A stretch of DNA of 64,000 bases from Octopus sinensis (GCF_006345805.1 NC_043026.1:5332001-5396000); one strand, 5' to 3'. Numbered from the stretch's first letter, positions 21,964 to 53,064 are shown. The notes: a model not told the origin generated them from the sequence alone. A program made the numbers and translations.

Positions 21964-24900
21964 TATATACCCAACCACAAATCATCATCATTGTTTAGCG
22001 TCCATTTTCCATGCTAGCATGGGTTGGACAGTTCAACTGGGGTCTGGGAAGCCAGAAGGCTTCACCAGGCCCCAGTCTGATCTGGCAGCGTTTCTACAGC
22101 TAGATGCCCTTCCTAATGCCAACCACTCCGTGAGTGTAGTGGGTGCTCCTTACGTGCCACCGGCACAGGAGGCTGGCAAACGGCCAGGATTGGTTGGTGC
22201 TTTTACGTGTCACCGACATAAACGCCAGTCAGGCCACGCTGGCATCTGCCACATTTGGACGGTACTTTTAACATGTCACCGGCACAGGTATCTTAACAAC
22301 AATTTCCATTTGGGCAAATCAATTTATTTGCACAGTAATAGAGAAACTCGTGTTCCCTTTGAAATTACTCTTGTGGTTTGGGCTTTAACTGCCCTCTCTA
22401 GCACGTAAGGTGTCCTGTTAAAGGTCACCTCTTTTGTGTATAAATATGTGCATTATTATATATATATTGGCTTCAAATTTTGGCACAAGGCCAGCAGATT
22501 CGTGGAATGCTCCAGTTTTGATTGCATCAGTCCCAGTGGCCATCGTCCCTGAATGCGAATCTCCATGGAATTAGAACTCAGAACATAAAGTCAGATGAAA
22601 ACACTGCTAAGCATTTTGCCTGGTGTACTAACGATTCTGCCAGCTCAGCAGATATACATACATATATATACACATATATATGTTTATATATACACGTATA
22701 TATATATATTTATATATATATATATATATATTACATATTTATATATATACTTACCTTTGTATATATACTTACTACATATGTCTATACATATACTTAATAT
22801 GAACATACACACATATATACAGCTACAGATGCATGCACATACTCACCCCTGCATACATACATGTGCTTACTGACCTACATATATACAGACACACATTCAT
22901 ACATTTATATACACACATATATACATTGATGAGAGGGATTATATATACATTGGTTTTTCTTAGGTTTTGTTTTCTGCAACAAAGAATGTCTGTTGAAATA
23001 GAATATTTTTCAGTAGAAAACAGACATTTTACATGAAAAAATCGTGAGGAATAATTTGATATTATATACAGTAACATACGGAGATATATACACACACACA
23101 TACATAGATATATGTATATGGACAGTGTGTGTGTGGTGTATTTAAGGATATTTAATTATCAGTATATCACTCTCTCCAAACCAATTAAAGGGCTCCTTTC
23201 TGATCCCTTATGGCAGATAAAATGCTAACACAAAAAATGAAAAGAGATGCAGCCAATGTTACCAAATGTGCGGAACTTAGGGATTTAGAAAATATCAAAC
23301 TTTAAAGATCTTTAGTACACAAAGCTCAGATCAAAATAGAATTCTTGTGATTTAACAGCCATACAGAGCTCTCGGTCATTGGCTCATTACATACATATAT
23401 ACATTCCTATAACAATAGAATCTGACTAGAAGGAGATTTGGCTGTTATTTCTATCAGGGTTAGCTACTCTAAAGCATTCTCCTTCCTTGCTTCGTTCAAT
23501 GTCCGACACATTAACGATGAAGTCATTCACTGCACAAATAACAGTCCTTTCTTCTAAATGCACAAGGCCTGACATTTTGTAGGGAAGCGGACGGTCGACT
23601 ACATGGCCTCAGTACTCAAATGATACTTGTTTTATTGACCCTGGGGAGATGAAACCAAAGTCGGCCTCGGTGGAATTTGAACTTGGAACATAGTGACAAG
23701 TGAAATACCACTAAGCATTTTGCCCTGTATGCTAATGATTCTTATTAATTATAATAATAATAATAACTATAATGGGCTTATTGTATACGATGTTAGGGTC
23801 ACTACAACTCATTGGAAAAGGTATGCCTGTATGTGTGTATGTATATGGGTGTGTTTGTAGGTACATGTTTATATGTATATATATGTATATATATGTACAT
23901 GTGTGTGTGTGTAGCTATATATGTATGTATACAAATTTAAATGTTGAGGATGGGATTTTTCCATATAAAGAAAGAAGGCAAAATAAGTGAATATGATTGG
24001 TTCAGAAACATGAAACACTTGAATGGAAATGCATGGAGAGGTGGTGGTGGTGGTGGCAATGTTGGAGAGGATGTAAAGAGAGAAAGAAAGAATATAGAAT
24101 TGGATGGGAGGTGGGGAGAGGGTGTCATTCATATAGTCTGTGTTAATCTGAGATAGGCGTGTCGATGTAATCTGGCTAACATATACTACAACACACCAAC
24201 ATATACACACACATACCTATACACAACAGACACATACTTTTAAACCAAGATACATACCCATGACAAGGTAACACCCACCAGGTATCTAGAAACTTCTTCC
24301 TGGTAGATTATAAATATAACTTTAAGTGCAGTATACTAGCCAAACCATTGCCACCTTTGCATGATATTTCTGAGAGAGACAGTCTTCAGGCTAGAATAAA
24401 CACCTCAACACAAGTAATCCAGGTAATTATTTTATTTAATACGCAATTTACCAATACACTTCGTTAAAGCTTCATTAGAACTATTTTGAAGCATAACTTT
24501 TATATTGGAATTTGTTTTATTTTCAGGCAGTATTTTTTCGACTAGAAAATTTTCAAAGACTTTACACTGTTACATTACAAGTAAACATTTTCATTTCCAG
24601 AATATAAAATAAAGTATAGTTTGGTTATGACTATGTCAAAACTATTTAATGGGAATTAGAGGAATGGATATGTTCATCTAAGGATACACAATTTTAGGTA
24701 GTTTACAGTGGATTTCTAATTCTCAAGTGAAATTTAAAATTTGTAAATTAATTTTATGGCTGTTAAATTATTAGTGTTTTGTAAACTTAATTTTTTAAAA
24801 GGTTAGCAAGGGAGAAGGGCCCTGCCGATGGTCCTGTATATTTCCAGGGTCTTCAAATGTGGTGAATGGAAGATAGACATTCTCAAAACAAGAGACCTAA

Positions 24901-25689
24901 CATGAATGCATACACCAGAGAAATCCCCTCCTAAAAAGCATCTCAAGGGCCAGGTGATGGTGTTGAAAAATGTGATAGATTAAGTCTGCAACCCAGGGAG
25001 GCAACAAAAGGATTTGAACTCAGATCACAAAGAACCACATTAAATACTACAAGGCATCTTGTCAAATATATAAATCCATCAGACCACCACCTCAGACTGG
25101 CATTTTAATTATCGACCCTTGCATAATAAAAAAATCAAAATTAATCTCGGCAGGATTTGAACTCAGTAGACAAAGAGTTTGTATAAATACCACAAGGTAG
25201 TGTGTGTGTGTAGCTATATATGTATACAAATTTCAATATTGAGGATCGGATTTTTCCATAAAAAGAAAGAAAGCAAAATAAGTAAAAAACAAATTTATAG
25301 CCTGATTAAGTTTGTGTCTAAGTCCAACGTTCTAACGACTCTACTAACACAATGTAACACATGTTTTGTTTATTTGTATTTTTTAATGTTCATATAAGCA
25401 TTTTTTGCCACTAAATTCAAAAATCACATTCATTTTTACCTAACATCGATAGTTATTTATTTATTCCTAATTTCATATTTGCTCGTTATATTTGTAACTT
25501 TTCTCTACAGCACTTTGCTGGTTCAATCTATTCTAGTATTGTAAGGATAATTACACATTTAGTAATTTTTCATTTATTGAAAGGTATTTAGGAAGTATAA
25601 TATTAGTTACAACAAAAAGAAACAATAAAACTCTGCACTGTAAATGCCTTGATAACTCTTTTCTTAAGATGAGAAGTGCTTTGACGATC

Positions 25690-26450
25690 GAGATTTTCTA
25701 GAGTGTATACCTTCATCTCTTCTGACTAGAGACCATATATAATCTCCCATCATAGCAGTATCCCATCGTCCTTGGTATCTTCTTTCCATAGTTGCGACGT
25801 CCTGATGAAATCTCTCACCATGATCCTCACTTCATGGCATTTCCAGTTCACAGATGTCTTGCAGTCTTCCCCCAGTAGATTCCATTCCTTCAACCTTGAA
25901 AGAATTTCAACTCCTGATTTAGTAAGACCCAGATCCCTGATTAAATCATCTAGCTCACTCTGATTTGGAAAGTGAGGCTCTGAAGTCGTTCATGGTACGA
26001 AAGCTTCTGCCATTTCTTGGCTTCTGCTACATGTTGACTCTTCAGATGAAATATTTTCTGGTGGTAGTGGTACCCGTAAACTGTCAGGTGCTCTAGATGA
26101 TGGTATGTCTGGATACTGAAGAGCTTGTCTTCTTTTCACTTTTCTGTACTTTGTCACATCGATCATACAAAACTAACAGTCATCGTGATGGTTCTTTGGC
26201 TCTCTCCATACCCTTGGAATGGCAAAAGGCATTGACCTTCCTGTACTTCTTAACCATCATTCTAGAGTAGACTGACAGCTTCCACATATCACATGTGGGG
26301 GCCTGTGGTTTGTCCTGATCACCCATGGGCATTCCGAAATAGTCAGTACGCTATCCACAATTTGGCACCTTTCACAATCTTATGTAATACCTGCTTTTTT
26401 CCAATATAATAACCACACACATAGCAAAATGTATCTGGAGAATTTTTACA
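25690..26450 (-). mobile_element. Chapaev(3)-like (CMC superfamily) transposase remnant with a large internal deletion
   Basis: Minus-strand YFGMPMGDQDKPQAP-HVIC and IPRVWREPKNHHDDC*FC (N-terminal Cys/His domain), then LIRDLGLTKSGVEILSSRLKEWNLL, joined almost directly to the C-terminal SEDHGERFHQDVATMERRYQGRWDTAMMGDYIWSLVR. Confidence 0.75.
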
Positions 26451-27703
26451 TATTCTAGAAGCCATCCTGAAAGTAGCACAACTTAGTAATTGGTCTGAAA
26501 GGGAAAATTAGACATACATTAGTTCGGAACATTATAACAATACCGAATATATAATAACATTGAAAGTCGACATATTATTTTTAACTGTTGATGAGACACA
26601 AAAAATAATTTCAGTTTTGGAATCAGCAGAAAAAATAGATTGATAAACAATAAAAAAAATACAATAAACAAATTCTTTTTGAAAATTGTTACGTTGTGTA
26701 AATGATCTTTTTCTTCTTTCAATCAATGAAATATATTTTTTTAACTGATTTTGATTTTAATATTATACTTTGTATATAAATGGAATTGTTCTGGTGATTT
26801 CATTTCTATTTTATATCTTGAAGCAAACAAGAAGAATTGTTTAAATATTAAACAATTTGGTGACAACATATATTTTCTCTCTCAGCACATCTTTATCCTA
26901 CATCAACATTTTAATGTGCAATGCATTAAATATATATATAAAGTGAGAGAGAGAGAGATACACACTGGTATACATACATATATACGCACACTCTTCACGT
27001 TTGTGCTAATTTCCTCCTACCATTTTATAAACTATAAAAAATGTGTCCAGGATTTCAAATACTTTTACAAGAAGAGAAAGTTTATATTTTTTTGAGCAAT
27101 TTCAAAAATATTTGATGAATTCTAAAGAAAGAAATTGTAAATTATATTTAATGACAAAAAGTTTTAGATTTTATTTTGCATGGAAAATTCAAAGTTTGTA
27201 AATCAATTTTACAGAAATATAAGCTAAGAAATCAAATAGGTACGTAATTGTGTCTTTATTTTTGTCCCACTAACATTGCTTGACAACCGATGTTGGTGTG
27301 TTTACATCCCTGTAACTTAAAGTTCAGCAAAAGACACCAATAGAATAAGTACTAGGCTTACAAAGAATAAGTCCTGGGGTCAATTTGTTTGACTAAAGGC
27401 AGTGCTCCAGTATGGCCACAGTCAAATGACTGAAACAAGTACAAGAATAAAAGAATATATATACATATATACACGTACACTATATAAATACACACACACA
27501 CATAATATATACATGTTTATGTAAAAGGGAAATAAAATGTTGAAGTTGATATTGAAAAGGAGAGAGGGAATGAGAGAAAGAGAGAGAGATGAAAGTATAA
27601 GAAGAGAAGGACATATGAAGGATATAAAATAGGAAAGGGAGGGTTGTTATCATTATTAATTACTATTATTATTATTATTATTAATTACTATTACTATTAT
27701 TTG

Positions 27704-28095
27704 GGTGGTGAGCTGGCAGAATCGTTAGCATGCTGGGCAAAATGCTAGGGAGCTATTTGTTTGCTTTTACGTTCTGAGTTCAAATTTTGCCGGCATCAAC
27801 ATTGATCCTTTCGGGGTCAATAAAATAAGTACCTTTTGTGTTCTGGAGTCGATGTAATCAATTTACCTGCTCTCCAGAACAAGCTGGCCTTCTGTTAAAA
27901 TTTGATGCCATTATCATTATTATAATTATTATTATGACTTATCTGCAACTACATTCTGAGTTCAAATTCAACCAAGGTCAACTTTGCCTTTCATCCTTTT
28001 GGGGTCGATTCAATAAGTTCCAGTTATGCACTGGAGGCGATGTAATTTACTAGTCCCCTCACCCCAAATTTCAGCCCTTGTGCCTATAGTAAGAG

Positions 28096-28179
<84 letters not shown>

Positions 28180-28740
28180 ATTATTTTTATAATTACTGTG
28201 ACGAGCTGGCAGAATTGTGAGGATGCAAAGCAAAATGTTGAGCGGCATTTTGTCCATCTTTACATTCTGAGTTCAAATTCCACCTTTTCGGATCAATAAA
28301 TTAAGTACTAGTTGAGTACTACTGGGTCAGTGTAATAGACTGGCCCCTCCTTGAACTTGCTGGCCTTGTGCCAAAACTTGAAATCATTTTTATTATATTA
28401 AATAAAACATAAAAGAAATCATTGCTGTTGTTGTTGTTGTTTTTTGCTGCTGCTGCTAATATTATTATTATTGATGTTGTTATTGTTATAGTTATTGATT
28501 ATTCTTCTTTATTATTATTAATGTGATGAACAAGCAGAATTGTTACAAAATGCCAGACAAAATACTTTGCATCATTTCTTCCAAGTTTACATTTTGAGTT
28601 CAAATTCCACCAAGGTTGATTTTGCCCCTCGTCCTTTTGGGATTGATAAAATAAGAACCAGTTAGGGGCTGGGGGATGACATAATCAATTAACCCCCCAC
28701 ACCCAAAATTTCAGGCCTTATGCCTATAGTAGAAAGGATT
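27704..28740 (+). mobile_element. Cluster of about 4 head-to-tail family-A SINE copies separated by (TAT)n
   Basis: GAGCTGGCAGAA / GAGTTCAAATT heads at about 27710, 27955, 28203 and 28530. The long (TAT)n tract spans 28098-28180. Confidence 0.8.
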
Positions 28741-29937
28741 ATTATTATCTTCAGAATATTACCAAAAAAAAGTGGGGGCATGGCTGTATGGTTAAGAAAT
28801 TCACTTCAGAACCTTGTGGTCTCAGGTTCAGTCCCACTTTGCAGCACCTTAAAGAATTAACTTCTTCTAATGTTCCAGGTTGACTAAAGCCTTATGAATG
28901 GGTTTCGTACATGGAACTGATAAATCCTATGGTATATACATGTGTGTGTATATTCATGTATGCACATCTACATTTGTACATGTATGTGTATGCATGTGTG
29001 TGTGTGTGTGTGTGTGTGTGCATATGTCTGCTCACGTCTCCTTGTCTTGACATCTGCTGCGAATTATAAACAAATGTCACGTCAAACAGTGTCGTTTGTT
29101 TGCAGTGTTCCACCAGAAAACATATACAACCATTGTGCTGTTCATGTTGGAAGAACTTGGGGAAATATTCTCTTGCTTGAAACCAGGTGAGGATTGGTAA
29201 GCCTCATCGAGTGTAGTCATAGACTTGACTGAGTGGCACTCACAAGAACCTGGCAAGAAAACAAACAAAATTATGAGAGGGAAAATACAAAAAAGAAAAT
29301 ACATCATCTGATGTATTATAAAGGTTTTGACATCCATTTTCCCTAACTGGCATGGGTAGGACAGTTGATGAGGAAGCAGTGAACCAGAGGACATTGCTGA
29401 GCTCCAATGAAAGATTTGGCAAGATTTCTACAGCTGGATGATCTTCTTAATACCAGATGCACACATACACATGTGTGTATGTGTTTATGCGTGCATAAGA
29501 GTATATGAATGAATAAACATGGGTTTACTTATGTTTGATTGCACATCTGATTTTGTATGCTAGCATGGGTTAGATGAATATATTATTGTAGCCTTGTTTT
29601 ACAGACAGACAGCCTTCCTATTGCTCACCCAAAACCATTTTGCAAGAACAAAAGTTCTTATTTCCCATGTCTTCCAAGGTGGGGGTGATTGGTTGACAGA
29701 TGTTTCTGCTTGGAGCAACTTAAAAGAGATTGCAAACATAAACAAATGCACAGACACCTACGCGCACACACACTCACCTCCAGTTCACTGCTTCCTGTAG
29801 CAGAAACAGCTGGAAGCTAATGAAGGTGTCTACGTAACTCTTGTTCTTTTGTCGTTCATTGATTCATATCTATAAACATACATAGACACAAATATTTATA
29901 CACGGGTATGTGAAGGTATATATATGTATATATATAC

Positions 29938-30011
<74 letters not shown>

Positions 30012-31521
30012 CATCATCATCATCATCATTTACCATCCGCTTTCCATGCTAGCATGGGTTGGACGGTTCAACAGGGGTCTGGGAAGCCAGAAGGCTGCAC
30101 CATGCCCAGTCTGATCTGGCAAAGTTTCTACGGCTGGATGCCCTTCCTAACGCCAACCACTCCATGAGTGTAGTGGGTTCTTTTTACGTGCATCCTGCTG
30201 TAGAAAGAAAACCAGAAAATGTAACTTCAGGCAAGATATTCTTTGAACCATCCAACCAATTCCAGCATGGAAAGTGGGCGTAAAATGATGATCATCATAC
30301 ATACATACAGACATATAGATGTATAAATATACATATGTGCATCCGTGTGTATATATTATACATGTATAAATATACATATGTGCATCCTTGTGTATATATT
30401 ATACACATTCATTCATATATATGTATGCATGTGTATATAAATACATCTACAATTAGATTAAAGTCTAATTATTATGAGGGGTTTTGTAGGTTTTTCTTCC
30501 CCAAAATAAACCAAGTAGAATGGCACAAATGAAACATAAACATTCATTCCAATTTAATTTTACAATAGAAATATTGGCAATTATCTGCTTTTCTCTGTAT
30601 AAACTTTGTTGTCAACAACAACAGCAATAACAACAACATAGCCTTATCCAGCTTTTCCCCAAAAATATGTTGTTGTTTAGTCCATGTATATTCAAAGAGC
30701 TGACATCCTGAACAAGGTCTCTTTTATTTTTCATTCCTCCTGGGGTCAATAGAGTAACAGTCATTATTTCATAGACCAAGGAGGGGTGGAGGATCATTCT
30801 GATGATGATGGGTCACCAGAATATCATTAAACACCCCACCAATATTTCCTAATCCACCTCATTAAACCCCCAATACTTCATAATAAACTACACCAAGTTA
30901 TAACTCCTCACCTAACACAAAACAAAACACACTTCACCTGCCAAACCCCTTTTTCATACAAACACATCTTTCTCATTGCTACCCAAACATTGTCCCTTAT
31001 ATTAAAGATAATTAAGATGAACCTACCTTTCATTAATTGGGCTTATTCATTAACCAATCTTTATGATCTCAATCAGCAACAAATAATAACGATCCTCTCA
31101 ATATGCTGTCTATCAGTGTGATTATATGAAAGCCCATCTTTGGATAAGCTTTCCGAGTTAATCAATGTTGTGTATGATAATTGTGTGGATTATATTGAAA
31201 TGTCGAGAGATTTACAGCATTTGTCAGGTTAAGAACAGTTTCATCTCCAGCTTTATTGGTATCTGTGAATCCAGGTAAATATGATGGAAACCAAGCCAAC
31301 CATGACTGTCACATCATTTCCAGTGCATATAATTATTAATAATACTTATATTCCTGATTTGTAGGGACGTGATATTTCATTATGCAACCATAAATTCCTG
31401 TAAAATATATTAAATCGTTTTAGAAGTCAACACCACATTCTACTTTGTTAGCAGTGTTTTTCACATTATTCTATTGATATTCCATAGAAATTATAGTTGG
31501 CTCTGATTTTTTGCTAAAACC

Positions 31522-31624
31522 TTTCCTATCCAGATGTCAGATGTAAACAAACAATGAGAACAAACAACAGATGTTTTTCTCTTTGATCTCATTGTTTGTT
31601 TCCATCTGACATTTCGATATGAAA
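31522..31624. other. Hairpin-forming inverted repeat (43-bp stem, 17-nt loop), pri-miRNA-like
   Basis: 31522-31564 pairs with 31582-31624: 38 Watson-Crick pairs, 1 G:U and 4 isolated mismatches, with no bulges (manual pairing). Confidence 0.85.
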
Positions 31625-31938
31625 TGTTGTAGCAGGAAATCAGTCCTGGCTATAATTTCTACCGATAATATCTGTAGAAATAACCTCAACAAAATATTTA
31701 TATTCCTTCTTACTACAAAACTTTTCACCATCACTTATATTCAGTCAATAAAGATAATGGTGTATTTATATCTTCAAGTTTTATTTCTAATGATTATTCC
31801 ACTGGAAACAGTTTAAATGTTTAACTTCACTGTCAAATAAACAATTTGGTTATATATTTAATGAAATGTGTGTTTTCCTTGAAATAATTCTTTGAATGAA
31901 TCAAGTAAATATTATTTTATCAAAAGCTTTTCACAAAA

Positions 31939-31964
31939 CTAATAAAGTTTTCATTTTATTTCAG
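31939..31964 (+). promoter_or_regulatory. Putative branch point and 3' splice acceptor of the large coding exon
   Basis: CTAAT at 31939-31943 followed by TTTTCATTTTATTTCAG ending at 31964, 117 nt upstream of the strong-context ATG at 32082. No upstream exon was identified. Confidence 0.45.
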
Positions 31965-32081
31965 CTTTCATGTAAAAATTAGTGAATTTTGAAGAGATAA
32001 ATTGTATTCCAAAGGAAGAAAACAAAATCCACAAAAAAGAATATATTTAACAGAAAAAGATAATAATTCTATATTCATAAA

Positions 32082-32585
32082 ATGGAGAAGATTAATGAAG
32101 AAAACAAAATGTTGGCTCTCATTCCTGCCACAGTCTGTGATACAACAGCAATTTATAAGGAAACTACACCAATTATTACCCAAATATTACATACACAAAA
32201 CACAAAGAAAAGAGAACAGGAAAGAAAAGACACAAAGAAATCTAAAGAACAGGAAAAGTCCATGTTACCAAGTTTCCTTCATATTGTGACATGTTACCGA
32301 GCACTAATCAAAACAGACCACATCAATACGTTTATAGATTATGTAAAGGATAAATGTAATCACATGGACTCTCTGGGTTTAAATGGATCTCGAATTTTAC
32401 GTAATATCAAACGTAAAATGCCAAGATTTCTGGAATTTGCAAACAAAATAATGATTTGTTCACCAAAACTTGATTGGTTTCAACAAAGACTCTTTGACAT
32501 TTATGTCACCTGTAACCCATACAACCACAAGACCATTGAACCACCAAAAGTAACCACAAAATTTCGTCCTCTTCGGCAGTTGTGA
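32082..32585 (+). CDS. 167-aa ORF, probable N-terminal (helical/charged) segment of the large propeller protein
   Basis: ATG in strong context (AAAATGG). Non-repetitive coding-like sequence with a charged KKREQERKDTKKSKEQEK stretch. Its TGA (32583-32585) overlaps the opening of the 1737-aa frame. No RING or B-box Cys/His pattern is visible. Confidence 0.65.
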   Translation: MEKINEENKMLALIPATVCDTTAIYKETTPIITQILHTQNTKKREQERKDTKKSKEQEKSMLPSFLHIVTCYRALIKTDHINTFIDYVKDKCNHMDSLGLNGSRILRNIKRKMPRFLEFANKIMICSPKLDWFQQRLFDIYVTCNPYNHKTIEPPKVTTKFRPLRQL

Positions 32586-35500
32586 CCAGAGAAGTAGAGA
32601 TTGAGGAATCTGGTGAAGACTTAAGCAACCCAATATCCAATATTGTTGTCATACAAGGGGGTATTGTAACATATTCCCGCCACTTTATGACAATATGTTG
32701 TATAACAAGAGACGGCAAAAGAAACGATGTTCGTTGCTCATCTTCTGTCACTGATTTTACAAGAATCAGTGAAGACACAGTCCTCGCCACCCTGCCCTTC
32801 CGAAAAATGATTCTTATTATCAACCCTTTAAGTTTGAGAATCAAAAGAATTCAGCTAGGATTAATCTTGGTTTCTTATTTGGAACATTCTACGCTTATAG
32901 GTGTAGAAATGTTTGGTCAGACCATATACGTCATTGACTGGGAAGAGAATAGAATAAAATACGAATTCATAACGAAAGAAACCCCTTCAGATATTGCTGT
33001 AGGAGCACAAAATAAACTTTTAGTATCCTTTTCCAATATTAACAGGGTTACCTGTTACAATGTAGATGGTCAGCAGTTATTTGAGGTGGATACCAATTCC
33101 CTGGACATTCCAAGCCACATCTCTGTGTACCAAAACCATTTTTATGTCCTCCAGGGACATATTATTTATCGGATATCAGGTACAGGTGCTGTGACAACAA
33201 GAGAAATTGGCATGAAATGCCGCCATATTTCTGTTGGCAGAGAAAACATTTTTGTAACCGATTATTTTGATGTCCTTCATATCATTGGAACAAATGAAGA
33301 CTTTTGGCCCAGGCAGTCATATAAACCCCAGCTATGGACCCCAACATTGAACAACTATATTTATATTGAGGATTGCTACAACATTACAAATATTCTACCT
33401 ATGTCTACATCTTCTATATTAATAATTTACAAAAACAAGAAAGCTAAATTATTCACTGATAATGGGGAAATAATTAACCAAAATAATTCAGTTTTCCTTG
33501 AGCTTCCTTCTTTCTGTTGTAGAATAGATGCAAACAGATTCCTGGTATTTTATTGTGAAATGAAAGGATTTCAGTATATCACCTGTCCTGAACTCAAAAA
33601 AGGCCCTTTAATAAAGGTGCAAACTGGTTACATGAAAATATGTCATGTTGTATCAAATAAGTGTCTAGCTGTGACCACCACTAAAAACAAAATCGAGGTC
33701 CATATCCTATTGATCAACGAAGATAAAGTTGACATTGCAGAAAGAATTTCTCTGGGACATCATAATGTCAGCATTGCTGCAACTCCAATTAATTTTGTAG
33801 TCGTAGATGGAAACGAAAATAAAATGGTATTTTATTCCACATGTGGTGAAGAACTTTTTCAAAAATACCTTCCATTCTATGGCCACCCTCATCACATCTA
33901 CTCTGATAATGTTTATTTCTATGTCCTCTTCAGGAGACACTCTATTCTCAGATGTTACGATCTATATGGACAAATGAAATGGCAGTGGGAACTGCCTTTC
34001 CCTGTTCACCCTCACATTGCTGTTTTCCAAGGAACTCTTTATGTCCCGGACTCTCAACTCAACAGGGTTCTTCTTTACAAGTATCAAGACCGGTCGTCTG
34101 GCTGTCTTTTACCCATTAAAAATCCTTATATCAGAAATCTAAATCTACGACTCAAAGAAAAGGAGAATGACCAAAAACTTGTCATTGGTGAAATATGTAA
34201 TCTGTCCAATGGACAGTTGGTGGTCTCTGACATCAAGCATGATTGCTTGTTGTACATTTCTGAGGAAGGAGACATTGTGTCCAGATTATCTCTGCCGTCT
34301 ACAGCCACAGATATATGTCGATGGGATTCTAATCATATAGGGGTCACATTACCCCTACAGAAACAATTAAGGGTCATCGGAAACCTATCAAAGACAGTGA
34401 GAAGTGTAAAATTAAGGCAGCCTTATGTACGGGTGTGTAAGATGGGTGAATGTGAAATTGTTAGTTATTGTGATAAACCATCACATTTAGACATTTTAGC
34501 CATCAATTATTATAATCAAGTTGAAGTAATTAAGACAATTAATATCCCTGTGTTTGTAAAATCATTATCAATAGACAAGAAAACAGAAAAGCTATTAATT
34601 GTTACTAGGGGAAAAGCTTTTCAGTACAACACTAGAATAGGTGGTGGTGGTGGTCATGGCAGTGATATTAGTACTAGAAGTATTCTTAATATGATATGCA
34701 GTGATTCAGTGTCTGATATAGAAGCTATCTTCAAGGACATTAGTGGTGGTGTTCATGGCAGAGCACATCATCAGAGTGGTGGAAGTGATGGTAGTATTAG
34801 TAGTAGGGATGGTAGTATTAGTTGTAGTGACGGTAGTATTAGTAGTGGTGATGGTAGTATTAGTAGTAGTGATGGTATGGTTTCCAGTGATTCAGAGTCC
34901 GAAACAGAAGCTTTCTTCAAGCACATTAATGGTGGTGGTCAAGGCGGTCGTCAGATGGTCCCCAGTGTTTTAATGTCCCAAGTGAAACGTCCCCTCAGTC
35001 TCCAAGGTGGATCTATTGACCAAACGTCTGTTTATCTGATAGACAGAAGCCGTATGTTTGCCATAAACGATCAGAATTTGTTGGTTAATGATCTCGTTAC
35101 TAATAATCAACTTAATTATTATATCGACCTGGTGGATGTATTTTCCAGACACATTTCTCTCAGTGAAATGTTGTCTTCCACTTTATATCTACAGGACCTG
35201 ACAGTTTCTGATAAAGCCAAACATATTCCTCCTCCTAAACATTTGGGAGACAAAGAACCAGCGAGGATTGATCGTTTGGTTCTTACTGAAAATAATCTGA
35301 TTGCAGGATGGGACTGGGTGAATGGAAACATTAAGATATTCACATTGGATGGTCAACTATTGGATTCAATCAAAGTGAATGTTTATAGACATATTAAAAT
35401 ATGTCGATGGCAGTCAAACACACTGGTCATTGCGAGTTGGGATTTTCTTGAAGATAAATACCAACTGCAGACATTAAAAGTGGAGTTTCCATTGTCGTTG

Positions 35501-37795
35501 GTAAGTTACCAAACGAGAAATATATATGAATGTGTGGCTTCTTTATCAAACAATCAACTGGTTTTTAGTGAAGAGGGAGATGTAAGACATTTGCATTTTG
35601 TTGATATTGATGAAATACATTCGAGTGTGAAGGAAATAAAAAAAATAGACATACCTGAACCATTAATAAGAAGAGAAGATGGAGATTATTCTGATAAAAT
35701 CCAGGATATTAAAGTTACTGATGAAGATGTCATCATTGTCTTAAACAAAAGATTCATCATTTTCTTCAACAGTGGTGGTCAATATTTACATTCAGTCAGA
35801 CGCTACATGGATTGTTTTTTTGGTGATGACAGGATGACAATTGATGACAGTTTTTTGTACATTTATGGTCAGTGGGAGAAATGTTTTGGTTTATCTGGAT
35901 ATGGAAACATTTTGTGTTTGACCCAGAATGGGGAATACAAGAGAATATTTTTAAATGAAAAAATTTATAAAGATAGAGTAGAATTCTCCAGTATAGACTG
36001 TAAAGGACCAAGGTTTGTTGGAAGCCCCAGGCGGGGAAAAAGGAATGAATTGTATGTTGAAGGGTTGTTTATGGTGAATCGAGACAGCTTCCCGGTTGCT
36101 CGTTTACAAACAGACGAATGTCCTGTTCAAGTAAAAGATTTTGATGTCTCTGAGGAAGGAAAGACAGTTGTGTGTGAAAAAGCCAATAATGGAATTGTTA
36201 AAATATTCGATGAAGACGGCCAGTTGCTATGTCACAGAAATGTTGCAAGTTTAGTTGGTGGTGTGTGTTTTACAAAAGAATCACACATAATGGCCACGGT
36301 TCCTAAAAGGAAAGAAATATTTCAACTGAATGGAAAAGATTTGCAGACATCTCAAGTTTGGTCGAGTCTCATCCCTTATGGTGTAATATGGAGAAAAGTG
36401 GCGGGTATTTACTGGTGTGTACATAATGAATTGATTGAATGTCATTGCATAAAGATTGATGGGGACCAAGTGAACATTCTGGAATCTGTGTCATCATTAA
36501 ATCTTGATTCTGGTCTTCGTTTCCCTTCCATTACATCTGAAACGAACAAGGAAATATTCAGTAATGAATTAATTAATAAATTGGAATTCATAGGAGGAGA
36601 TGGAGATGGAGGAGGAAGAAGAAGAGGTAAATCAGGTGAAATAATTGGTAAAGGTAGATTAAAGGTGAGATGTGGTAATTACATAGCGGAGATTAATAAT
36701 TCAGGAATTGATGAAATATCAGTGAGGAGACTTCCATATAGGACAGCAATGGTCCCTTTTTCCATTCCTGCATTCGAGGAACCTGTTGATTATAATTTGT
36801 TGGACATTAGGAACCGGAACAGTAAACTAATTAAGTTAGATGAGAATGTGAGTGTGTTGATGTTTCGAGAAAGTGTCACATTAATCAGAACAACAACAAC
36901 AACAGTGGACATACTTCAACATGAACAACAACAACGACCAGCACTGGACATATGTCGGTGGACAGAGGAATGTTTCATTGTCGCCTTTGGGAGAGAAATG
37001 AGGGTCTTCAACCGGGATCTCCGTCGTTTAAAAACCATCACAACTGAGAAATACTACAACAGGATTTATAAATACAACGACAATCAACTCGTGTGTGGTG
37101 GTCATTATATTAGAGACATAACACAAGAAGAGAGACACAAGAAATACCGAAGAATATGGAAGAACAACAAGGATTACTATTATTGCATTGACTCCGACAT
37201 CTTTGACCCTTATTATGTGGATGTGGTTGATATCAAAGATGGGAAATGTAAAGATGAAGTGTGTGATGGGAAGATGAGAAGATGGGGAAGGTTTGAGGGA
37301 TATGAAGGGGTGGTGGATGGTGTGGGAGTCACATCTTTTGGTGATGTTGTTGTTTTGAGGAGGGAGATGGAGGAGGATGAGGATAAGAATAGATGGGGGG
37401 ATATGATGAACATGTTAGGAGTGAGGGAAGTTTTTTGTTTAGTGGAATGGTTCAGGGAAAAGTCTTTGGTGAGGAGGATAAGAATAGCAGAAGAAAGGGT
37501 TTTTGGTCTGGAATATTATTATACTGCAAGACCTCGTCTGACCATAATTGGTGAATGTGTTTATATAACAGATTTCATAAACAATATTTACGAAATACCT
37601 CGACATATTGAAGAGGAAACATCTGAAGATGATGAAATCCTGAGATTAGAAGATAATCCAAAATATTTACTCCTCAGAGGGGATGATAATGAAGTCTTTG
37701 AAGTTCTTGGTTTGGATGTTTCAGACAATTCTTTGATGGTTTTTGGAATTATTCCTGGACGTCAATCTTTTGCTTTCTTTTATTTTGACAAATAA
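32582..37795 (+). CDS. Intronless 1737-aa ORF: six tandem NHL/TolB-like beta-propeller modules (mollusc TRIM-like C-terminal domain type), uncharacterised
   Basis: A 5.2 kb stop-free frame in otherwise ORF-poor DNA. An equivalent blade motif recurs at aa 58 (DFTRISEDTVLATLP), 311 (FCCRIDANRFLV), 577 (DICRWDSNHIGVTLP), 939 (KICRWQSNTLVIA), 1227 (GVCFTKESHIMATVP) and 1456 (DICRWTEECFIVAF). NHL-like blades include PSDIAVGAQNKLLVS, HPHIAVFQGTLYVPDSQLNRVLLY and EICNLSNGQLVVSD. The listed start is GTG; the first ATG (32687) is in weak context. Confidence 0.88.
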   Translation: MTREVEIEESGEDLSNPISNIVVIQGGIVTYSRHFMTICCITRDGKRNDVRCSSSVTDFTRISEDTVLATLPFRKMILIINPLSLRIKRIQLGLILVSYLEHSTLIGVEMFGQTIYVIDWEENRIKYEFITKETPSDIAVGAQNKLLVSFSNINRVTCYNVDGQQLFEVDTNSLDIPSHISVYQNHFYVLQGHIIYRISGTGAVTTREIGMKCRHISVGRENIFVTDYFDVLHIIGTNEDFWPRQSYKPQLWTPTLNNYIYIEDCYNITNILPMSTSSILIIYKNKKAKLFTDNGEIINQNNSVFLELPSFCCRIDANRFLVFYCEMKGFQYITCPELKKGPLIKVQTGYMKICHVVSNKCLAVTTTKNKIEVHILLINEDKVDIAERISLGHHNVSIAATPINFVVVDGNENKMVFYSTCGEELFQKYLPFYGHPHHIYSDNVYFYVLFRRHSILRCYDLYGQMKWQWELPFPVHPHIAVFQGTLYVPDSQLNRVLLYKYQDRSSGCLLPIKNPYIRNLNLRLKEKENDQKLVIGEICNLSNGQLVVSDIKHDCLLYISEEGDIVSRLSLPSTATDICRWDSNHIGVTLPLQKQLRVIGNLSKTVRSVKLRQPYVRVCKMGECEIVSYCDKPSHLDILAINYYNQVEVIKTINIPVFVKSLSIDKKTEKLLIVTRGKAFQYNTRIGGGGGHGSDISTRSILNMICSDSVSDIEAIFKDISGGVHGRAHHQSGGSDGSISSRDGSISCSDGSISSGDGSISSSDGMVSSDSESETEAFFKHINGGGQGGRQMVPSVLMSQVKRPLSLQGGSIDQTSVYLIDRSRMFAINDQNLLVNDLVTNNQLNYYIDLVDVFSRHISLSEMLSSTLYLQDLTVSDKAKHIPPPKHLGDKEPARIDRLVLTENNLIAGWDWVNGNIKIFTLDGQLLDSIKVNVYRHIKICRWQSNTLVIASWDFLEDKYQLQTLKVEFPLSLVSYQTRNIYECVASLSNNQLVFSEEGDVRHLHFVDIDEIHSSVKEIKKIDIPEPLIRREDGDYSDKIQDIKVTDEDVIIVLNKRFIIFFNSGGQYLHSVRRYMDCFFGDDRMTIDDSFLYIYGQWEKCFGLSGYGNILCLTQNGEYKRIFLNEKIYKDRVEFSSIDCKGPRFVGSPRRGKRNELYVEGLFMVNRDSFPVARLQTDECPVQVKDFDVSEEGKTVVCEKANNGIVKIFDEDGQLLCHRNVASLVGGVCFTKESHIMATVPKRKEIFQLNGKDLQTSQVWSSLIPYGVIWRKVAGIYWCVHNELIECHCIKIDGDQVNILESVSSLNLDSGLRFPSITSETNKEIFSNELINKLEFIGGDGDGGGRRRGKSGEIIGKGRLKVRCGNYIAEINNSGIDEISVRRLPYRTAMVPFSIPAFEEPVDYNLLDIRNRNSKLIKLDENVSVLMFRESVTLIRTTTTTVDILQHEQQQRPALDICRWTEECFIVAFGREMRVFNRDLRRLKTITTEKYYNRIYKYNDNQLVCGGHYIRDITQEERHKKYRRIWKNNKDYYYCIDSDIFDPYYVDVVDIKDGKCKDEVCDGKMRRWGRFEGYEGVVDGVGVTSFGDVVVLRREMEEDEDKNRWGDMMNMLGVREVFCLVEWFREKSLVRRIRIAEERVFGLEYYYTARPRLTIIGECVYITDFINNIYEIPRHIEEETSEDDEILRLEDNPKYLLLRGDDNEVFEVLGLDVSDNSLMVFGIIPGRQSFAFFYFDK
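34699..34945 (+). repeat. In-frame coding repeat: 61-bp direct repeats flanking 4+ copies of a 21-bp unit (DGSISSx)
   Basis: 34699-34759 resembles 34885-34945 (SDSVSDIEAIFKDISGG vs SDSESETEAFFKHINGG; offset 186 nt). The 21-bp units start at 34787, 34808, 34829, 34850 and partially 34871. Confidence 0.9.
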
Positions 37796-37796
37796 A
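37791..37796 (+). promoter_or_regulatory. AATAAA overlapping the stop codon (possible polyadenylation signal)
   Basis: GAC AAA TAA A places AATAAA at 37791-37796. The hexamer is common in AT-rich DNA, so support is weak. Confidence 0.25.
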
Positions 37797-37821
37797 TATT
37801 TCCAGAAATATTAAACTTCAA

Positions 37822-37912
37822 TCTTCTTCTTCTTCTTCTTCTTCTTCTTGTAAATAGCTTCGCCCGGGAATCGAACTTGCATCGCATACATTGCATTCTA
37901 CACACTAACACT
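37822..37912 (-). mobile_element. Short tRNA-derived retroposed unit with an (AAG)n tail
   Basis: Minus strand ...GCAAGTTCGATTCCCGGGCGAAGC (B box/T-arm) followed by about 9 AAG repeats (37822-37849). The 5' half is degenerate. Confidence 0.5.
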
Positions 37913-38999
37913 TATTGTTGTAACATTCCTCAACACTCTCTCTTTGTGTGTGTGTGTATATTTATATACAGTATATGTACATGCGTTTATATATATATAC
38001 ACACATATTTAGGAATGTATGTATAGAAATAAGGCTAGAAGTATGTATGTTTGTGTGTGTGTGTATATATATATATACGCATGCATGTATGTATAGGAAT
38101 GTCTTGTCCGAAACCAGAGACTTTCATAATCGTTGATTCTCCATTAAAAGACAGACGACCAACAAACAACAACAAAAACAGCAGACGACCACCGCCACCG
38201 CTTCCATCATCGTCATCAGCGTTGTGTGTGCGTGTGTGCAGTCTGCATCTGACAGTTTTTAACGTTTAATAAGAATAGATTGTTGTTGTTGTTGTTGCAG
38301 TGACATTCCAACTGCACACACGCACAAACATTGCCTTTCGTCCTCGTAGGGTTGTTGTTGTTGTTGTTGTTGCTGTTGGGGGTTCATAAAAAAAGAGAAG
38401 GACACTTTAAGAAGCATTCAGTAAAAGCTTTCCCATAGCTGGTCATTTTTCATGCTAGAAATAGAAACCACTTTACTTTTCATATAAAATTTGAAGGACA
38501 GATAAGAAGCATTCATAAATAAAATTGACCTGTATATGGTCTCATTTCATGCTAGAAAGAGCCACAAAAACCTTCACATTTTTATTTCATCACTAATAAA
38601 AATCGAAGGACAATTTACAAAGTATTCACGTCAAATATTGTCCTATAGATGGCCTAACATCGTGCTAGAAATAACAGCCAAATACTCTGAAATTTGCATC
38701 GTTTTTCATCAAAAAAGTGAAGGACACTTTAAGAAGCAACTCTAAAAATATTGTCCCGTGGCAGTTTAAGTGTAAAATATTATAAAAGTATGCATCTATG
38801 AGTTTTGTGTTTAAAAAACATAGCAAAGACATGTGTGTATATGTAGGTATATATAAATATACATGTGTATAAAGGTTCCTTGATGATGTATATGCTTCTT
38901 CCCTAATAACTTGCAGAAAAATGGATATTTTTCATGGAATTTCTTACAAATATGCTTCTGTGTGTGTGTGTGTGTGTTGTGTGTGTGTGTATGCATGGT

Positions 39000-52130: not shown

Positions 52131-52132
52131 AA

Positions 52133-52172
<40 letters not shown>

Positions 52173-52240
52173 ATATATATATATATATATATAGGCGCCG
52201 AAGTGGCTGTGTTTTAAGAAGTTTGCTTCCCAACCACATG

Positions 52241-52652
52241 GTCTGAAAATCTCCATTCAGTTGAAATATTTCTTTCCTTTTAGGAACCGTGGCCATTATG
52301 AGTGATTCTTGTGTAAAACAAACACCACCAACTAAACTTGCAACATTTCTGTGTCGTAGCAACTGCCCGTCTTCATAAAATATTTTAACATTTCCATTAT
52401 TGGCTTTTTCACACACAACTGTCTTTCCTTCCTCAGAGACATCAAAATTTTTTACTTGAACAGGACATTCGTCTGTTTGTAAACGAGCAACCGGGAAGCT
52501 GTCTCGATTCACCATAAACAACCCTTCAACATACAATTCATTCGTTCCCCTCCTGGTGCTTCCAACAAACCTTGGTCCTTTACAGTCAATACTGAAGAAA
52601 TCTACTTCATCTTTATAAATTCTTTTATTTAAAAATATTCCCTTGTTTTTCC
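52241..52652 (-). pseudogene. Inverted partial paralog of the propeller gene (end of module 4 / start of module 5)
   Basis: Aligns to 35931-36348. IFLN..IYKD...SIDCKGPRFVGS...NELYVEGLFMVNRDSFPVARLQTDECPVQVK...VGGVCFT...ATVPKRKEIFQLNG. There are no stops and two 3-nt deletions (418 vs 412 bp). The ends are fused to unrelated DNA and a SINE head. Confidence 0.92.
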
Positions 52653-53064
52653 TAATCTCTGTAAAAGAACGCAATACACGAATTTTTAAGATGGTGTGAC
52701 ACATTCCATTTGTAAATGAATCTATAAATTCATTTTATTGATTGTTGCACAGAATTGATTGAGATGATCACTTTGTGGAAAAGCGAATTTAATTATTCAG
52801 CATCACTGTTGCAAAATGATGTGTCACAACAACGATTGTTAACAACAATGCCCTGTTTAGTCATAAATTTGAAGAATGTTATATCCGCTTCTAATTATCT
52901 TGCAGGTCATTAATAGGTTCTTCTGCCATACTCTTTCTAATTAGAGTGTCTGATCTCTGGATCTACAGGTAGTAAAACCTCTTTCTTCCATAGATTCTCT
53001 TCATTAAAAGAAAGAAAAGGAACCTGTTGTAATAACACTCTCTTTTACTACCATAGACACAGCT

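What the first reader, a model, noticed from the sequence alone, without database searches (positions are those of the whole stretch)
32082..37795. Giant single-exon protein made of six tandem, highly diverged beta-propellers with no recognisable RING/B-box or membrane anchor
Seen: a 5.2 kb uninterrupted frame with an equivalent blade motif at aa 58, 311, 577, 939, 1227 and 1456 (spacings 253, 266, 362 including a ~100-aa insertion, 288, 229). Three copies conserve even the DNA (ATATGTCG[A/G]TGG at about 34312, 35399 and 36950). There is no signal peptide or TM helix. Established: molluscs have greatly expanded TRIM-like families in which a B-box/coiled-coil precedes one NHL/TolB-like six-bladed propeller, and NHL propellers bind RNA, proteins or glycans. 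Inference: this is a lineage-specific cytoplasmic multi-propeller derivative that multiplied the ligand-binding module six-fold and lost the E3/B-box head. It could be a rapidly evolving intracellular sensor or scaffold (immune or RNA-binding). This architecture is not one I can assign to a named gene.
Basis: partly seen in the sequence, partly recalled or inferred. Interest (0 to 1): 0.72.

Follow-up and report, generated by a model that had tools for sequence, protein, structure and literature searches.

The report
Octopus giant six-propeller protein gene
This is one copy, broken by a single missing base, of an uncharacterised octopus-only family of intronless genes. Each encodes a huge cytoplasmic protein of six NHL-like beta-propellers in a row, and two of the six change amino acids unusually fast between copies, as a ligand-recognition part would.

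Summary
Window 32582-37795 (+) is a 1737-codon open frame. AlphaFold models are all-beta, and Foldseek matches only multi-propeller proteins. No RING, B-box, signal peptide or TM helix was found.

- The 167-codon head ORF (32082-32585) lies in another frame. Compared with intact paralogs, one C is missing at 32577/78, so this copy is a very young pseudogene or an assembly error.
- The gene is not unique. At least 70 protein clusters exist, all from octopods (Octopus vulgaris, O. sinensis, O. bimaculoides, Argonauta hians). Their coding sequence is a single exon, and copies spread by segmental duplications of at least 16 kb.

An exhaustive profile search of 1.84 billion proteins found no six-propeller relative outside octopods. 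The nearest outsiders are NHL-repeat proteins, including mollusc B-box+NHL proteins (hhalign 98.7%, E 2.6e-16).

Among seven recent paralogs, propellers 4 and 6 have median dN/dS of 1.63 and 1.44. Propellers 1-3 and 5 have 0.26-0.58. I read this as a constrained four-propeller part carrying two diversifying recognition propellers. The ligand and the expression pattern are unknown. Novelty: a new architecture of a known fold. Interest is moderate.

The parts
32082..32585 (+). Head ORF of 167 aa with an ATG start. It has a K/E-rich N-terminus followed by a conserved ~90-aa segment ending ...LDWFQQRLFDIYVTCNPYNHKTIEPPKVTTKFRPL. It ends in a premature stop caused by the frameshift.
   Evidence: It aligns with the N-termini of P0003 and P0002. 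It has no Pfam or PDB match and no similarity to any propeller module. The head type varies between paralogs.
32577..32578 (+). One-base deletion. The window has CGG-CAG where the intact P0003 gene has CGGCCAG. This shifts the frame between the head and propeller 1.
   Evidence: DNA alignment with the P0003 gene in L001 and protein comparison.
32582..37795 (+). Open frame of 1737 codons plus stop that encodes the six propeller modules. The frame is open from 32540.
   Evidence: It is 83-93% identical to O. vulgaris paralogs.
32630..33301 (+). Propeller 1 (ORF2 aa ~17-240). It has 23 predicted strands, which fits six blades. Constrained: median dN/dS 0.26.
33335..34087 (+). Propeller 2 (ORF2 aa ~252-502). 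It has 24 predicted strands, which fits six blades. Median dN/dS 0.58.
34178..34639 (+). Propeller 3, first ~4 blades (ORF2 aa ~533-686). It contains the DICRW motif at 34313. This is the module that best matches mollusc B-box+NHL propellers. Median dN/dS 0.37.
34640..34948 (+). Gly/Ser-rich low-complexity insertion (ORF2 aa ~687-789) that almost all other family members lack. It includes a 21-nt tandem repeat of 4.5 copies at 34784-34877.
   Evidence: It was left out of both structure models, which end at ORF2 aa 690 and start at aa 790.
34949..35218 (+). Conserved segment after the insertion (ORF2 aa ~790-879). I infer that it supplies the last ~2 blades of propeller 3.
   Evidence: The inference rests on length bookkeeping against propeller 2 and on conservation. 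The model here is low-confidence because its partner blades were in the other model. It has no hhalign match of its own.
35219..36064 (+). Propeller 4 (ORF2 aa ~880-1161), with the KICRW motif at 35399. It is hypervariable among recent paralogs: median dN/dS 1.63, above 1 in 21 of 21 pairs. Variation is concentrated in loops.
36131..36760 (+). Propeller 5 (ORF2 aa ~1184-1393). It is the shortest module, with about 4 blades modelled plus a disordered Gly-rich loop. It is nearly invariant among recent paralogs (entropy 0.11; median dN/dS 0.40).
36824..37792 (+). Propeller 6 (ORF2 aa ~1415-1737), with the DICRW motif at 36950. Its distal half is hypervariable. Median dN/dS 1.44, above 1 in 20 of 21 pairs.
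22229..38876 (+). Segmental-duplication block collinear with the P0002 locus of O. vulgaris OX597841.1 at 91-97% DNA identity. Similarity to three paralog loci ends about 1.1 kb past the stop codon.
52216..52701 (-). Isolated fragment of another family copy. It corresponds to P0003 aa ~1254-1409, with 75-88% amino-acid identity to the closer O. vulgaris paralogs.

Best explanation
The locus is one copy of an octopod-specific, multicopy gene family whose coding sequence is intronless. This copy is probably recently disabled or mis-assembled.

The family's 1,600-1,900-aa cytoplasmic products have a variable N-terminal head of unknown fold followed by six tandem NHL-like, roughly six-bladed beta-propellers. 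The propeller module is homologous to the single propeller of mollusc B-box+NHL (TRIM-like) proteins. It was multiplied six-fold, and the B-box is absent. The family then expanded by large segmental duplications with exchange between copies.

Proposed mechanism (inferred). The protein is a multivalent intracellular binding platform. Propellers 1-3 and 5 are a constrained part, perhaps for assembly or for an invariant partner. Propellers 4 and 6 are diversifying ligand-recognition modules. Each paralog would then present a different pair of recognition surfaces, as expected for recognition of fast-changing targets such as viral or transposon-derived RNA or protein.

Shown: the fold, the six modules, the homology, the taxonomic restriction, the gene structure, the frameshift and the selection pattern by module. 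Inferred: cytoplasmic location (from the absence of a signal peptide or TM helix), the binding function, the division into constrained and recognition propellers, and the nature of the ligand.
For: - ORF and frameshift.
- Family membership. 54 to 71 octopod protein clusters, none with a name. 37 of the 71 lie on one 29.19-Mb O. vulgaris record.
- Intact paralogs have single-exon coding sequences in O. vulgaris, O. sinensis, O. bimaculoides and Argonauta hians.
- Six modules in register by hhalign.
- All-beta AlphaFold models with 23 and 24 strands in domains 1 and 2. Foldseek finds only multi-propeller chains.
- NHL link. The PDB profile hits are all NHL domains. In the exhaustive search, most of the non-family hits that were checked against Pfam are NHL or B-box+NHL proteins. 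hhalign against B-box+NHL proteins gives 98.7% probability and E 2.6e-16, with a shared motif G.L.v.D..N..LL...G.....L.LP..P.D....D.n.v.VTLP..KQL. That outside family carries Pfam zf-B_box and NHL.
- No RING, B-box or TM helix.
- Selection. dN/dS over the whole coding sequence is 0.40-0.57 in the comparisons with the O. sinensis, O. bimaculoides and Argonauta copies, so the family is a constrained coding gene. Across 21 pairs of 7 recent paralogs, median omega is 1.63 for P4 and 1.44 for P6, against 0.26-0.58 for P1-P3 and P5. dS is similar across modules, but dN is several-fold higher in P4 and P6. Variation is concentrated in loops.
- Duplication. A block of at least 16.6 kb is collinear with the P0002 locus. 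dS is mosaic along the gene: window against P0006 gives 0.8 in P1 and 0.08 in P2, which indicates exchange between copies.
Against: - No expression data could be examined.
- The window's own ORFs are not annotated anywhere in the collection.
- This copy is frameshifted. Several O. vulgaris models are split, fused or given introns, so part of the family is decaying.
- Omega above 1 is individually significant in only 4 of 21 pairs for P4 and 7 of 21 for P6. The pairs share branches, and gene conversion and indel-rich stretches in P6 may distort the estimates.
- Direct Pfam NHL hits fall below threshold: 1 of 25 members at E 0.002, and none for the window.
- Blade counts for propellers 3, 5 and 6 are uncertain.
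- The full six-propeller assembly was not modelled, and pTM is low (0.48 and 0.66).
- No ligand or partner is known.
Confidence: 0.6

Rival explanations
1. This particular locus is a dead copy. The frameshift at 32577/78 is real, translation from the ATG stops after 167 aa, and the 5.2-kb frame is open only because the lesion is very recent. The family may be functional, but this copy does nothing.
For: The deletion of one C relative to the intact P0003 gene is unambiguous in the sequence given, and the P0002 and P0004 proteins read through the same site. The ORFs are not on record as annotated products. Other copies are visibly broken, and a loose fragment lies at 52216-52701. Overall dN/dS against the closest paralog P0002 is 1.02.
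Against: There are zero stops in 1737 codons and no other frame-breaking indel, despite dS ~0.04-0.06 to its nearest paralogs. Its per-module pattern (P1-P3 at 0.2-0.6, P4 and P6 above 1) matches that of intact-intact pairs. It was therefore under the family's normal constraint until very recently. A one-base error at a CC dinucleotide in an assembly is an equally simple reading.
Confidence: 0.45
2. The family is a scaffold or regulator with no arms-race role. The high dN in propellers 4 and 6 reflects relaxed constraint in dispensable modules of a redundant, decaying family rather than positive selection.
For: Most pairwise tests do not exclude omega = 1. Many copies are fragmentary. The comparisons with the O. 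sinensis, O. bimaculoides and Argonauta copies give omega 0.39-0.72 for P4 and P6, not above 1.
Against: 41 of 42 P4/P6 pairs exceed 1, and 11 pairs are individually significant, including comparisons between three full-length intact copies (P0003/P0002 P6 omega 3.4, P = 0.002). The frames stay open. Variation is loop-biased. Under pure relaxation omega should approach 1 but not exceed it.
Confidence: 0.25
3. The proteins are sequence-specific RNA-binding regulators like TRIM-NHL proteins (Brat, LIN-41/TRIM71). Each propeller would read an RNA motif, and the family would diversify post-transcriptional control rather than defence.
For: The only solved-structure sequence hits are NHL domains of the TRIM-NHL class, among them the RNA-binding proteins TRIM71 and Brat. 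Homology to B-box+NHL proteins is strong. The head has a Lys/Arg-rich stretch.
Against: Similarity is too low to test conservation of RNA-contacting residues. NHL propellers also bind proteins. Nothing here distinguishes an RNA ligand from a protein ligand.
Confidence: 0.15
4. The ORF belongs to a mobile element or an endogenised virus, and its copy number reflects transposition.
For: The copy number is high and the coding sequence is intronless. A reverse-transcriptase fragment lies 2.2 kb downstream at 40022-40492. Some gene models are fused to DUF4371 or zinc-finger domains.
Against: No transposase, RT, integrase or capsid domain was found in the ORF or in 25 relatives. Copies share at least 16 kb of collinear flank with variable upstream ends, which indicates segmental duplication rather than a compact element. 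The RT fragment lies outside the shared block. The fold and homology are those of a cellular NHL propeller.
Confidence: 0.03

Closest known systems
Mollusc B-box + NHL (RING-less, TRIM-like) proteins of about 470-620 aa. Examples are the Mytilus galloprovincialis 'B box-type domain-containing protein' VDI39367.1 (P0101), Potamilus streckersoni KAK3588083.1 (P0090) and P0100 from an unnamed ENA assembly.
   Same: The propeller is homologous (hhalign 98.7%, E 2.6e-16 over 153 columns) with a shared ...VTLP..KQL... blade motif. The family is expanded within a lineage, and a bivalve-expanded B-box orthogroup is reported in PMC8382680. P0100 also has a single-exon coding sequence. No signal peptide was noticed.
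   Different: Those proteins have one or two B-boxes, a linker and one propeller. The octopus family has no B-box, a different head and six propellers in one chain. It is three to four times longer, and no direct Pfam NHL or B-box hit passes threshold.
Canonical TRIM-NHL proteins (TRIM71/LIN-41, Brat, TRIM2, TRIM3, Thin)
   Same: These are the only solved structures detected by sequence profile, at E 0.002-0.2. They share the six-bladed, four-stranded propeller. They are cytoplasmic, and their NHL top face binds RNA or protein (established knowledge).
   Different: The octopus family has no RING, no B-box and no filamin domain, and it has six propellers instead of one. The similarity is far below family thresholds.
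Multi-propeller scaffolds (IFT-A subunits IFT140/122/144, Utp21, DDB1, LRP4/megalin YWTD arrays)
   Same: These are the best Foldseek matches, at E 1e-22 to 1e-13, because they too are chains of beta-propellers. They show how tandem propellers serve as assembly platforms.
   Different: They are WD40 or YWTD propellers, mostly seven-bladed, with only 7-12% identity to the models. They have 2-3 propellers (or extracellular arrays with EGF spacers) and are conserved single-copy genes. TM-scores are low (0.1-0.3), so only the fold class is shared.

Membership tests
NHL-repeat beta-propeller (Pfam PF01436, beta-propeller clan) | Six-bladed propeller with four antiparallel strands per blade of about 40 aa | tested here: met
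   The AlphaFold2 model has 23 strands in ORF2 aa 20-236 and 24 strands in aa 255-500, with pLDDT about 85-90. Foldseek finds propeller chains only. Blade counts for propellers 3, 5 and 6 are less certain.
NHL-repeat beta-propeller (Pfam PF01436, beta-propeller clan) | Sequence match to the Pfam NHL repeat model above its gathering score | tested here: not met
   The window protein has no NHL hit. Among 25 relatives, only one hits NHL, at E 0.002. DUF4934 is hit by 10 of 25 with best E 0.0077, all below cut-off.
NHL-repeat beta-propeller (Pfam PF01436, beta-propeller clan) | Profile-level homology to proteins that do pass the NHL model | tested here: met
   hhalign of A4 against A6 gives 98.7% probability and E 2.6e-16. 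A6 members P0100, P0103 and P0102 score 38, 36 and 26 bits on NHL against a cut-off of 20. Most of the non-family hits in the exhaustive search that were checked against Pfam are NHL proteins. The PDB profile hits are all NHL domains.
TRIM / RBCC proteins (TRIM-NHL class) | N-terminal RING finger | tested here: not met
   There is no RING hit in the window ORFs or in 25 relatives. The head has no Cys/His cluster.
TRIM / RBCC proteins (TRIM-NHL class) | One or two B-box zinc fingers | tested here: not met
   There is no zf-B_box or ANCHR-like B-box hit. hhalign aligns only the propeller to the B-box+NHL family, not the head.
TRIM / RBCC proteins (TRIM-NHL class) | Coiled coil between the B-box and the C-terminal domain | not tested
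It has no sequence match to anything.
TRIM / RBCC proteins (TRIM-NHL class) | A single C-terminal NHL propeller | tested here: not met
   There are six modules in register.
WD40 tandem-propeller scaffolds (IFT-A, Utp21, DDB1) | WD40 repeat signature and seven-bladed propellers | tested here: not met
   No WD40 Pfam hit reaches the cut-off. Strand counts fit six blades. The Foldseek similarity is at fold-class level only, with 7-12% identity and TM 0.1-0.3.
Octopod six-propeller family (unnamed; e.g. O. bimaculoides LOC106878473, O. sinensis LOC115226288) | End-to-end alignment of the head plus six propellers with family members, ending ...FAFFYFDK | tested here: met
   The junction-bridged window product aligns along its full length with P0003 (86%), and its N half is 95% identical to P0002.
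Octopod six-propeller family (unnamed; e.g. O. bimaculoides LOC106878473, O. sinensis LOC115226288) | Uninterrupted single-exon coding sequence | tested here: not met
   The window copy has a 1-nt deletion at 32577/78. Intact paralogs are single-exon.

The most novel reading that the evidence does not exclude
Octopods may have evolved their own germline-encoded family of intracellular variable receptors. Each member would be a six-propeller protein in which four constrained propellers carry two hypervariable recognition propellers (P4 and P6). Diversity would arise by segmental duplication and by exchange of modules between paralogs clustered on one small chromosome. The family would recognise viruses or transposons, making it a functional analogue of TRIM5/TRIM-SPRY or NLR repertoires built from NHL propellers without an E3 ligase head.
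Probability: 0.2. Interest if true: 0.75.

Novelty: new variant of a known kind. Interest (0 to 1): 0.5.

Why it matters
Cephalopod genomes are known for lineage-specific expansions such as protocadherins, C2H2 zinc fingers and GPCRs. This family appears in databases only as 'uncharacterized' or 'hypothetical' proteins, and I found no paper describing it.

It shows how a common single-domain binding module, the NHL propeller of mollusc B-box proteins, can be multiplied into a 1,900-aa six-propeller chain and then amplified to dozens of copies.

The contrast between modules is the useful result. Four propellers are conserved, and two evolve at or above the neutral amino-acid rate. This gives a concrete, testable prediction of which surfaces bind variable ligands.

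If the family is an immune or genome-defence repertoire, it would be a new type of invertebrate recognition system. If not, it is still a clean case of domain-level birth-and-death evolution and a likely source of annotation errors in octopus genomes, since many models are fused, split or given false introns.

Tried and rejected
- Self-BLASTP of the 1737-aa product found no internal repeat at E<=10. Only profile-profile comparison sees the modules.
- Pfam on the window ORFs and on 25 relatives found nothing above cut-off.
- The word-indexed homolog search returned only octopod family members, both with the single sequence and with the family alignment. The exhaustive search was needed to reach them.
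- The transposon or viral-origin idea was rejected. There are no mobile-element domains, and duplication occurs in blocks of at least 16 kb with variable upstream ends.
- Programmed frameshifting at 32577 was rejected, because paralogs simply carry the extra C.
- Look-ups of the window's own ORFs as annotated products found nothing on record, so the source assembly and any annotation of this copy stay unknown.
- Literature searches for an octopus NHL, propeller or novel-family description found nothing. Neither the O. vulgaris genome paper nor the repeat-annotation paper mentions the family or OX597841.
- Rfam and tRNA scans of the window found nothing.
- The head domain has no relative by Pfam, PDB profile or hhalign to the propellers or to the B-box proteins.
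- The DNA 12-mer repeat is not strong evidence on its own.

Full report
**1. What is at the coordinates**

Window 32582-37795 (+) is a 1737-codon open frame, and the frame is open from 32540. The window is AT-rich (28-46% G+C, 35-37% across the gene) and looks eukaryotic. It has no tRNA or Rfam match.

Just upstream, ORF 32082-32585 (167 aa, ATG start) ends in a stop that overlaps the start of the long frame, but it lies in a different frame.

Intact relatives read ...KFRPLRPVVTREVEIEESG.... The window reads ...KFRPLRQL* in one frame and VTREVEIEESG in the next. A DNA alignment with the intact P0003 gene shows that the window has CGG-CAG where the paralog has CGGCCAG, so one C is missing at 32577/78. 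With X placed at the junction, the 1903-aa product aligns end to end with P0003 (1870 aa, 86%). Its N half is 95% identical to P0002.

**2. Are there six modules?**

BLASTP of the protein against itself finds nothing. I built a 22-sequence family alignment and compared 150-aa slices with hhalign. This gave off-diagonal matches of up to 96.5% probability.

I then cut the alignment at domain boundaries taken from the structure models. All six modules connect, and always in the same register:

| Module pair | hhalign probability | Aligned columns |
|---|---|---|
| P2-P4 | 94.6% | 187 |
| P4-P6 | 94.0% | 180 |
| P3a-P6 | 95.9% | 69 |
| P3a-P4 | 90.7% | 120 |
| P4-P5 | 91.3% | 93 |
| P2-P3a | 88% | 103 |
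| P1-P2 | 78% | 184 |

The head matches no module.

The 12-mer ATATGTCGRTGG is present exactly at 34313, 35399 and 36950 and encodes I-C-R-W. By itself it is weak evidence: 0.57 matches are expected, and 2 of 100 shuffles reached 3.

The long third spacing is due to a Gly/Ser-rich insertion (ORF2 aa ~687-789) that almost all other members lack. It contains a 21-nt tandem repeat of 4.5 copies at 34784-34877.

**3. Fold**

I ran two AlphaFold2 jobs with family alignments.

- ORF2 aa 1-690 gave pLDDT 80.3 and is entirely short beta-strands. There are 23 strands in aa 20-236 and 24 in aa 255-500, which fits two six-bladed, four-stranded propellers separated by low-confidence linkers. A further 15 strands in aa 535-682 run up to the insertion.
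- ORF2 aa 790-1737 gave pLDDT 71.2 and is again all-beta. It has confident domains at about aa 880-1161, 1184-1304 (plus 1361-1393) and 1415-1737.

Foldseek against the PDB returns only multi-propeller chains for both models. Hits include IFT-A subunits (E 9e-22 and 6e-15), the Utp21 tandem WD domain, LRP4, DDB1 and megalin. TM-scores are low (0.1-0.3), as expected when inter-domain orientation is free.

The segment after the insertion (aa 790-879) is conserved, but it was modelled without its partner blades and has low confidence. That it completes propeller 3 is an inference from length bookkeeping against propeller 2.

The maximum 19-residue hydropathy is 1.40, so there is no TM helix. The N-terminus is not hydrophobic.

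**4. Which kind of propeller, and where from?**

Pfam gives nothing above threshold for the window protein or for 25 relatives. The best results were DUF4934 in 10 of 25 members (best E 0.0077) and NHL in 1 of 25 (E 0.002).

Family profiles searched against all PDB sequences hit, apart from a few noise-level matches at E > 0.1, only NHL domains: TRIM71, Brat, TRIM2, TRIM3 and Thin, at E 0.002-0.2.

I ran an exhaustive HMMER search with a profile of the head plus propellers 1-3 against 1.84 billion representatives. It found only 39 proteins at E<=0.001.
- The 19 hits with E below 1e-28 are family members or fragments, and all those checked come from octopods.
- After a steep drop come weak hits at E 1e-7 to 1e-3. 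Pfam identifies these mainly as NHL-repeat proteins: bacterial CARDB+NHL giants and proteins of about 470-620 aa with B-box and NHL domains.
- The named ones are bivalve proteins: the Mytilus 'B box-type domain-containing protein' and a Potamilus hypothetical protein.

An alignment of seven of these weak hits, four with a B-box and two more with NHL repeats only, shows the same blade motif as the octopus modules...G.L.L.D..N......G..L....L...PFDV..VD...V.VTLP..KQ..F. hhalign between it and the octopus profile gives 98.7% probability and E 2.6e-16 over 153 columns. It aligns octopus propeller 3 to the start of their propeller.

That outside family carries Pfam zf-B_box and NHL and is itself hugely expanded in some unnamed assemblies. 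P0100 is also single-exon.

So the propellers are NHL-type by transitive homology. They fail the direct Pfam test, and no RING or B-box is present.

**5. The family**

Homolog searches return 54 protein clusters with the single sequence and 71 with the family profile. All come from Octopus vulgaris, O. sinensis, O. bimaculoides and Argonauta hians, at 31-93% identity, and all are labelled uncharacterized or hypothetical.

37 of the 71 lie on one 29.19-Mb O. vulgaris record, OX597841.1. Copies were sampled there at 9.57, 9.80, 10.31, 10.43, 22.17 and 22.66 Mb.

Intact copies have single-exon coding sequences in all four species. Several O. vulgaris models are fused (P0001 holds two copies), split (P0018 is preceded by a 465-aa model), or given introns (P0004, P0011). 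This suggests that many copies are broken or hard to annotate. Models carrying C2H2 zinc fingers or DUF4371 are probably fusions with neighbours.

N-terminal heads fall into at least three types. They converge on a conserved segment before ...KFRPL.

No paper describing the family was found.

**6. How copies arise**

The window is collinear with the P0002 locus from 22229 to 38876 at 91-97% DNA identity. It is collinear with the P0003 and P0006 loci over shorter, patchier upstream stretches. In all three, similarity stops about 1.1 kb past the stop codon. This pattern indicates segmental duplication, not transposition of a compact element.

Synonymous divergence is mosaic along the gene. Window against P0006 gives dS 0.81 in propeller 1 but 0.08 in propeller 2. 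This indicates exchange between paralogs.

A loose fragment of another copy, about 490 bp long, lies at 52216-52701 on the minus strand.

**7. Selection**

I computed Nei-Gojobori dN/dS on codon alignments. Over the whole gene it is 0.40-0.57 in the comparisons with the O. sinensis, O. bimaculoides and Argonauta copies. The family is therefore a constrained coding gene, though a fast one. It is 0.87-1.02 between the most recent O. vulgaris paralogs.

The average hides a sharp difference between modules. Across 21 pairs of seven recent paralogs:

| Module | Median omega | Pairs above 1 |
|---|---|---|
| P1 | 0.26 | 0 of 10 |
| P2 | 0.58 | 2 of 21 |
| P3a | 0.37 | 0 of 21 |
| P3b | 0.56 | 3 of 21 |
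| P4 | 1.63 | 21 of 21 |
| P5 | 0.40 | 1 of 21 |
| P6 | 1.44 | 20 of 21 |

A binomial test against neutrality gives P<=0.05 in 4 pairs for P4 and 7 pairs for P6. One example is P0003/P0002 in P6, with omega 3.4 and P = 0.002; both copies are intact.

dS is similar across most modules (0.02-0.14), but dN is several-fold higher in P4 and P6.

Protein entropy among recent paralogs agrees: P4 0.53 (loops 0.72, strands 0.36), P6 0.40 and P5 0.11.

Caveats: the pairs share branches, recombination is present, and P6 has indel-rich stretches. Nei-Gojobori ignores transition bias, which tends to lower omega rather than raise it.

**8. Status of this copy**

The window copy shows the same per-module pattern as intact-intact pairs. 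It has no stop in 1737 codons and no other frame-breaking indel, at dS 0.04-0.06 from its nearest relatives. The single-base loss is therefore either very recent or an assembly error. I cannot distinguish the two without reads. Neither ORF is on record as an annotated product.

**9. Mechanism (inference)**

The protein has no signal peptide or TM helix, six NHL-type propellers and no catalytic or E3 domain. This points to a cytoplasmic, multivalent binding platform.

The selection pattern suggests a division of labour. Propellers 1-3 and 5 would form a constrained part, for self-assembly or for an invariant partner. Propellers 4 and 6 would carry ligand-contacting loops that differ between paralogs.

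By analogy with TRIM-NHL proteins (RNA or protein binding on the propeller top face, established knowledge) and with positively selected TRIM repertoires in vertebrates, the most likely role is recognition of fast-changing intracellular targets, viral or transposon-derived. I give that reading about 0.2-0.35. The anatomical and evolutionary description deserves about 0.85.

Rival readings are relaxed constraint in a decaying family, endogenous RNA regulation, and a mobile-element origin, which I consider disfavoured.

**10. Verdict**

The feature is a new architecture of a known fold: six NHL-like propellers with no B-box. It belongs to an unnamed, octopod-restricted, actively duplicating family. 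Interest is moderate. The selection contrast between modules is the most useful new lead.

Noticed in passing
window 52216-52701 (-), within ORF 52066-52704: An isolated ~490-bp fragment of another family copy. It corresponds to P0003 aa ~1254-1409, with up to 92% DNA identity to the P0003 gene. No further pieces of that copy lie nearby.
   Followed up: partly
window 40022-40492 (+): A 156-aa ORF with a partial reverse-transcriptase (RVT_1) match at E 1.5e-5, below the Pfam cut-off. It is probably a retrotransposon remnant. It lies just outside the block shared with paralog loci.
   Followed up: partly
window 7674-7766 (-): A 31-aa match at 97% identity to the first 31 residues of the spliced O. 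vulgaris model P0004. It is on the opposite strand, 24 kb upstream of the gene. It is probably a repeat that the annotators used as a false first exon in the P0004 model.
   Followed up: no
window 8990-9089: A run of 100 N, which marks an assembly gap.
   Followed up: no
window 34784-34877: A 21-nt tandem repeat (AGTGATGGTAGTATTAGTAGT, 4.5 copies, 89% matches) that encodes DGSISS-like heptads inside the Gly/Ser insertion of propeller 3. The length of the insertion differs greatly between paralogs.
   Followed up: partly
window 31900-31975: A polypyrimidine tract followed by CAG (ttcattttatttcag) about 110 bp upstream of the ATG, inside the region that is 95% conserved with paralog loci. It may be a splice acceptor, which would imply a non-coding 5' exon further upstream.
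   Followed up: no
L001 20137-22589 (O. vulgaris OX597841.1, downstream of the P0003 gene): A second, partial family copy lies 4.5 kb downstream of P0003. It is 97% identical to window 33878-34348 and then 75-80% identical to 34953-37128. It overlaps a 414-aa gene model annotated with C2H2 zinc-finger hits, which is probably a chimeric model.
   Followed up: no
window 37822-37849: A perfect (TCT)9 microsatellite 27 bp after the stop codon.
   Followed up: no
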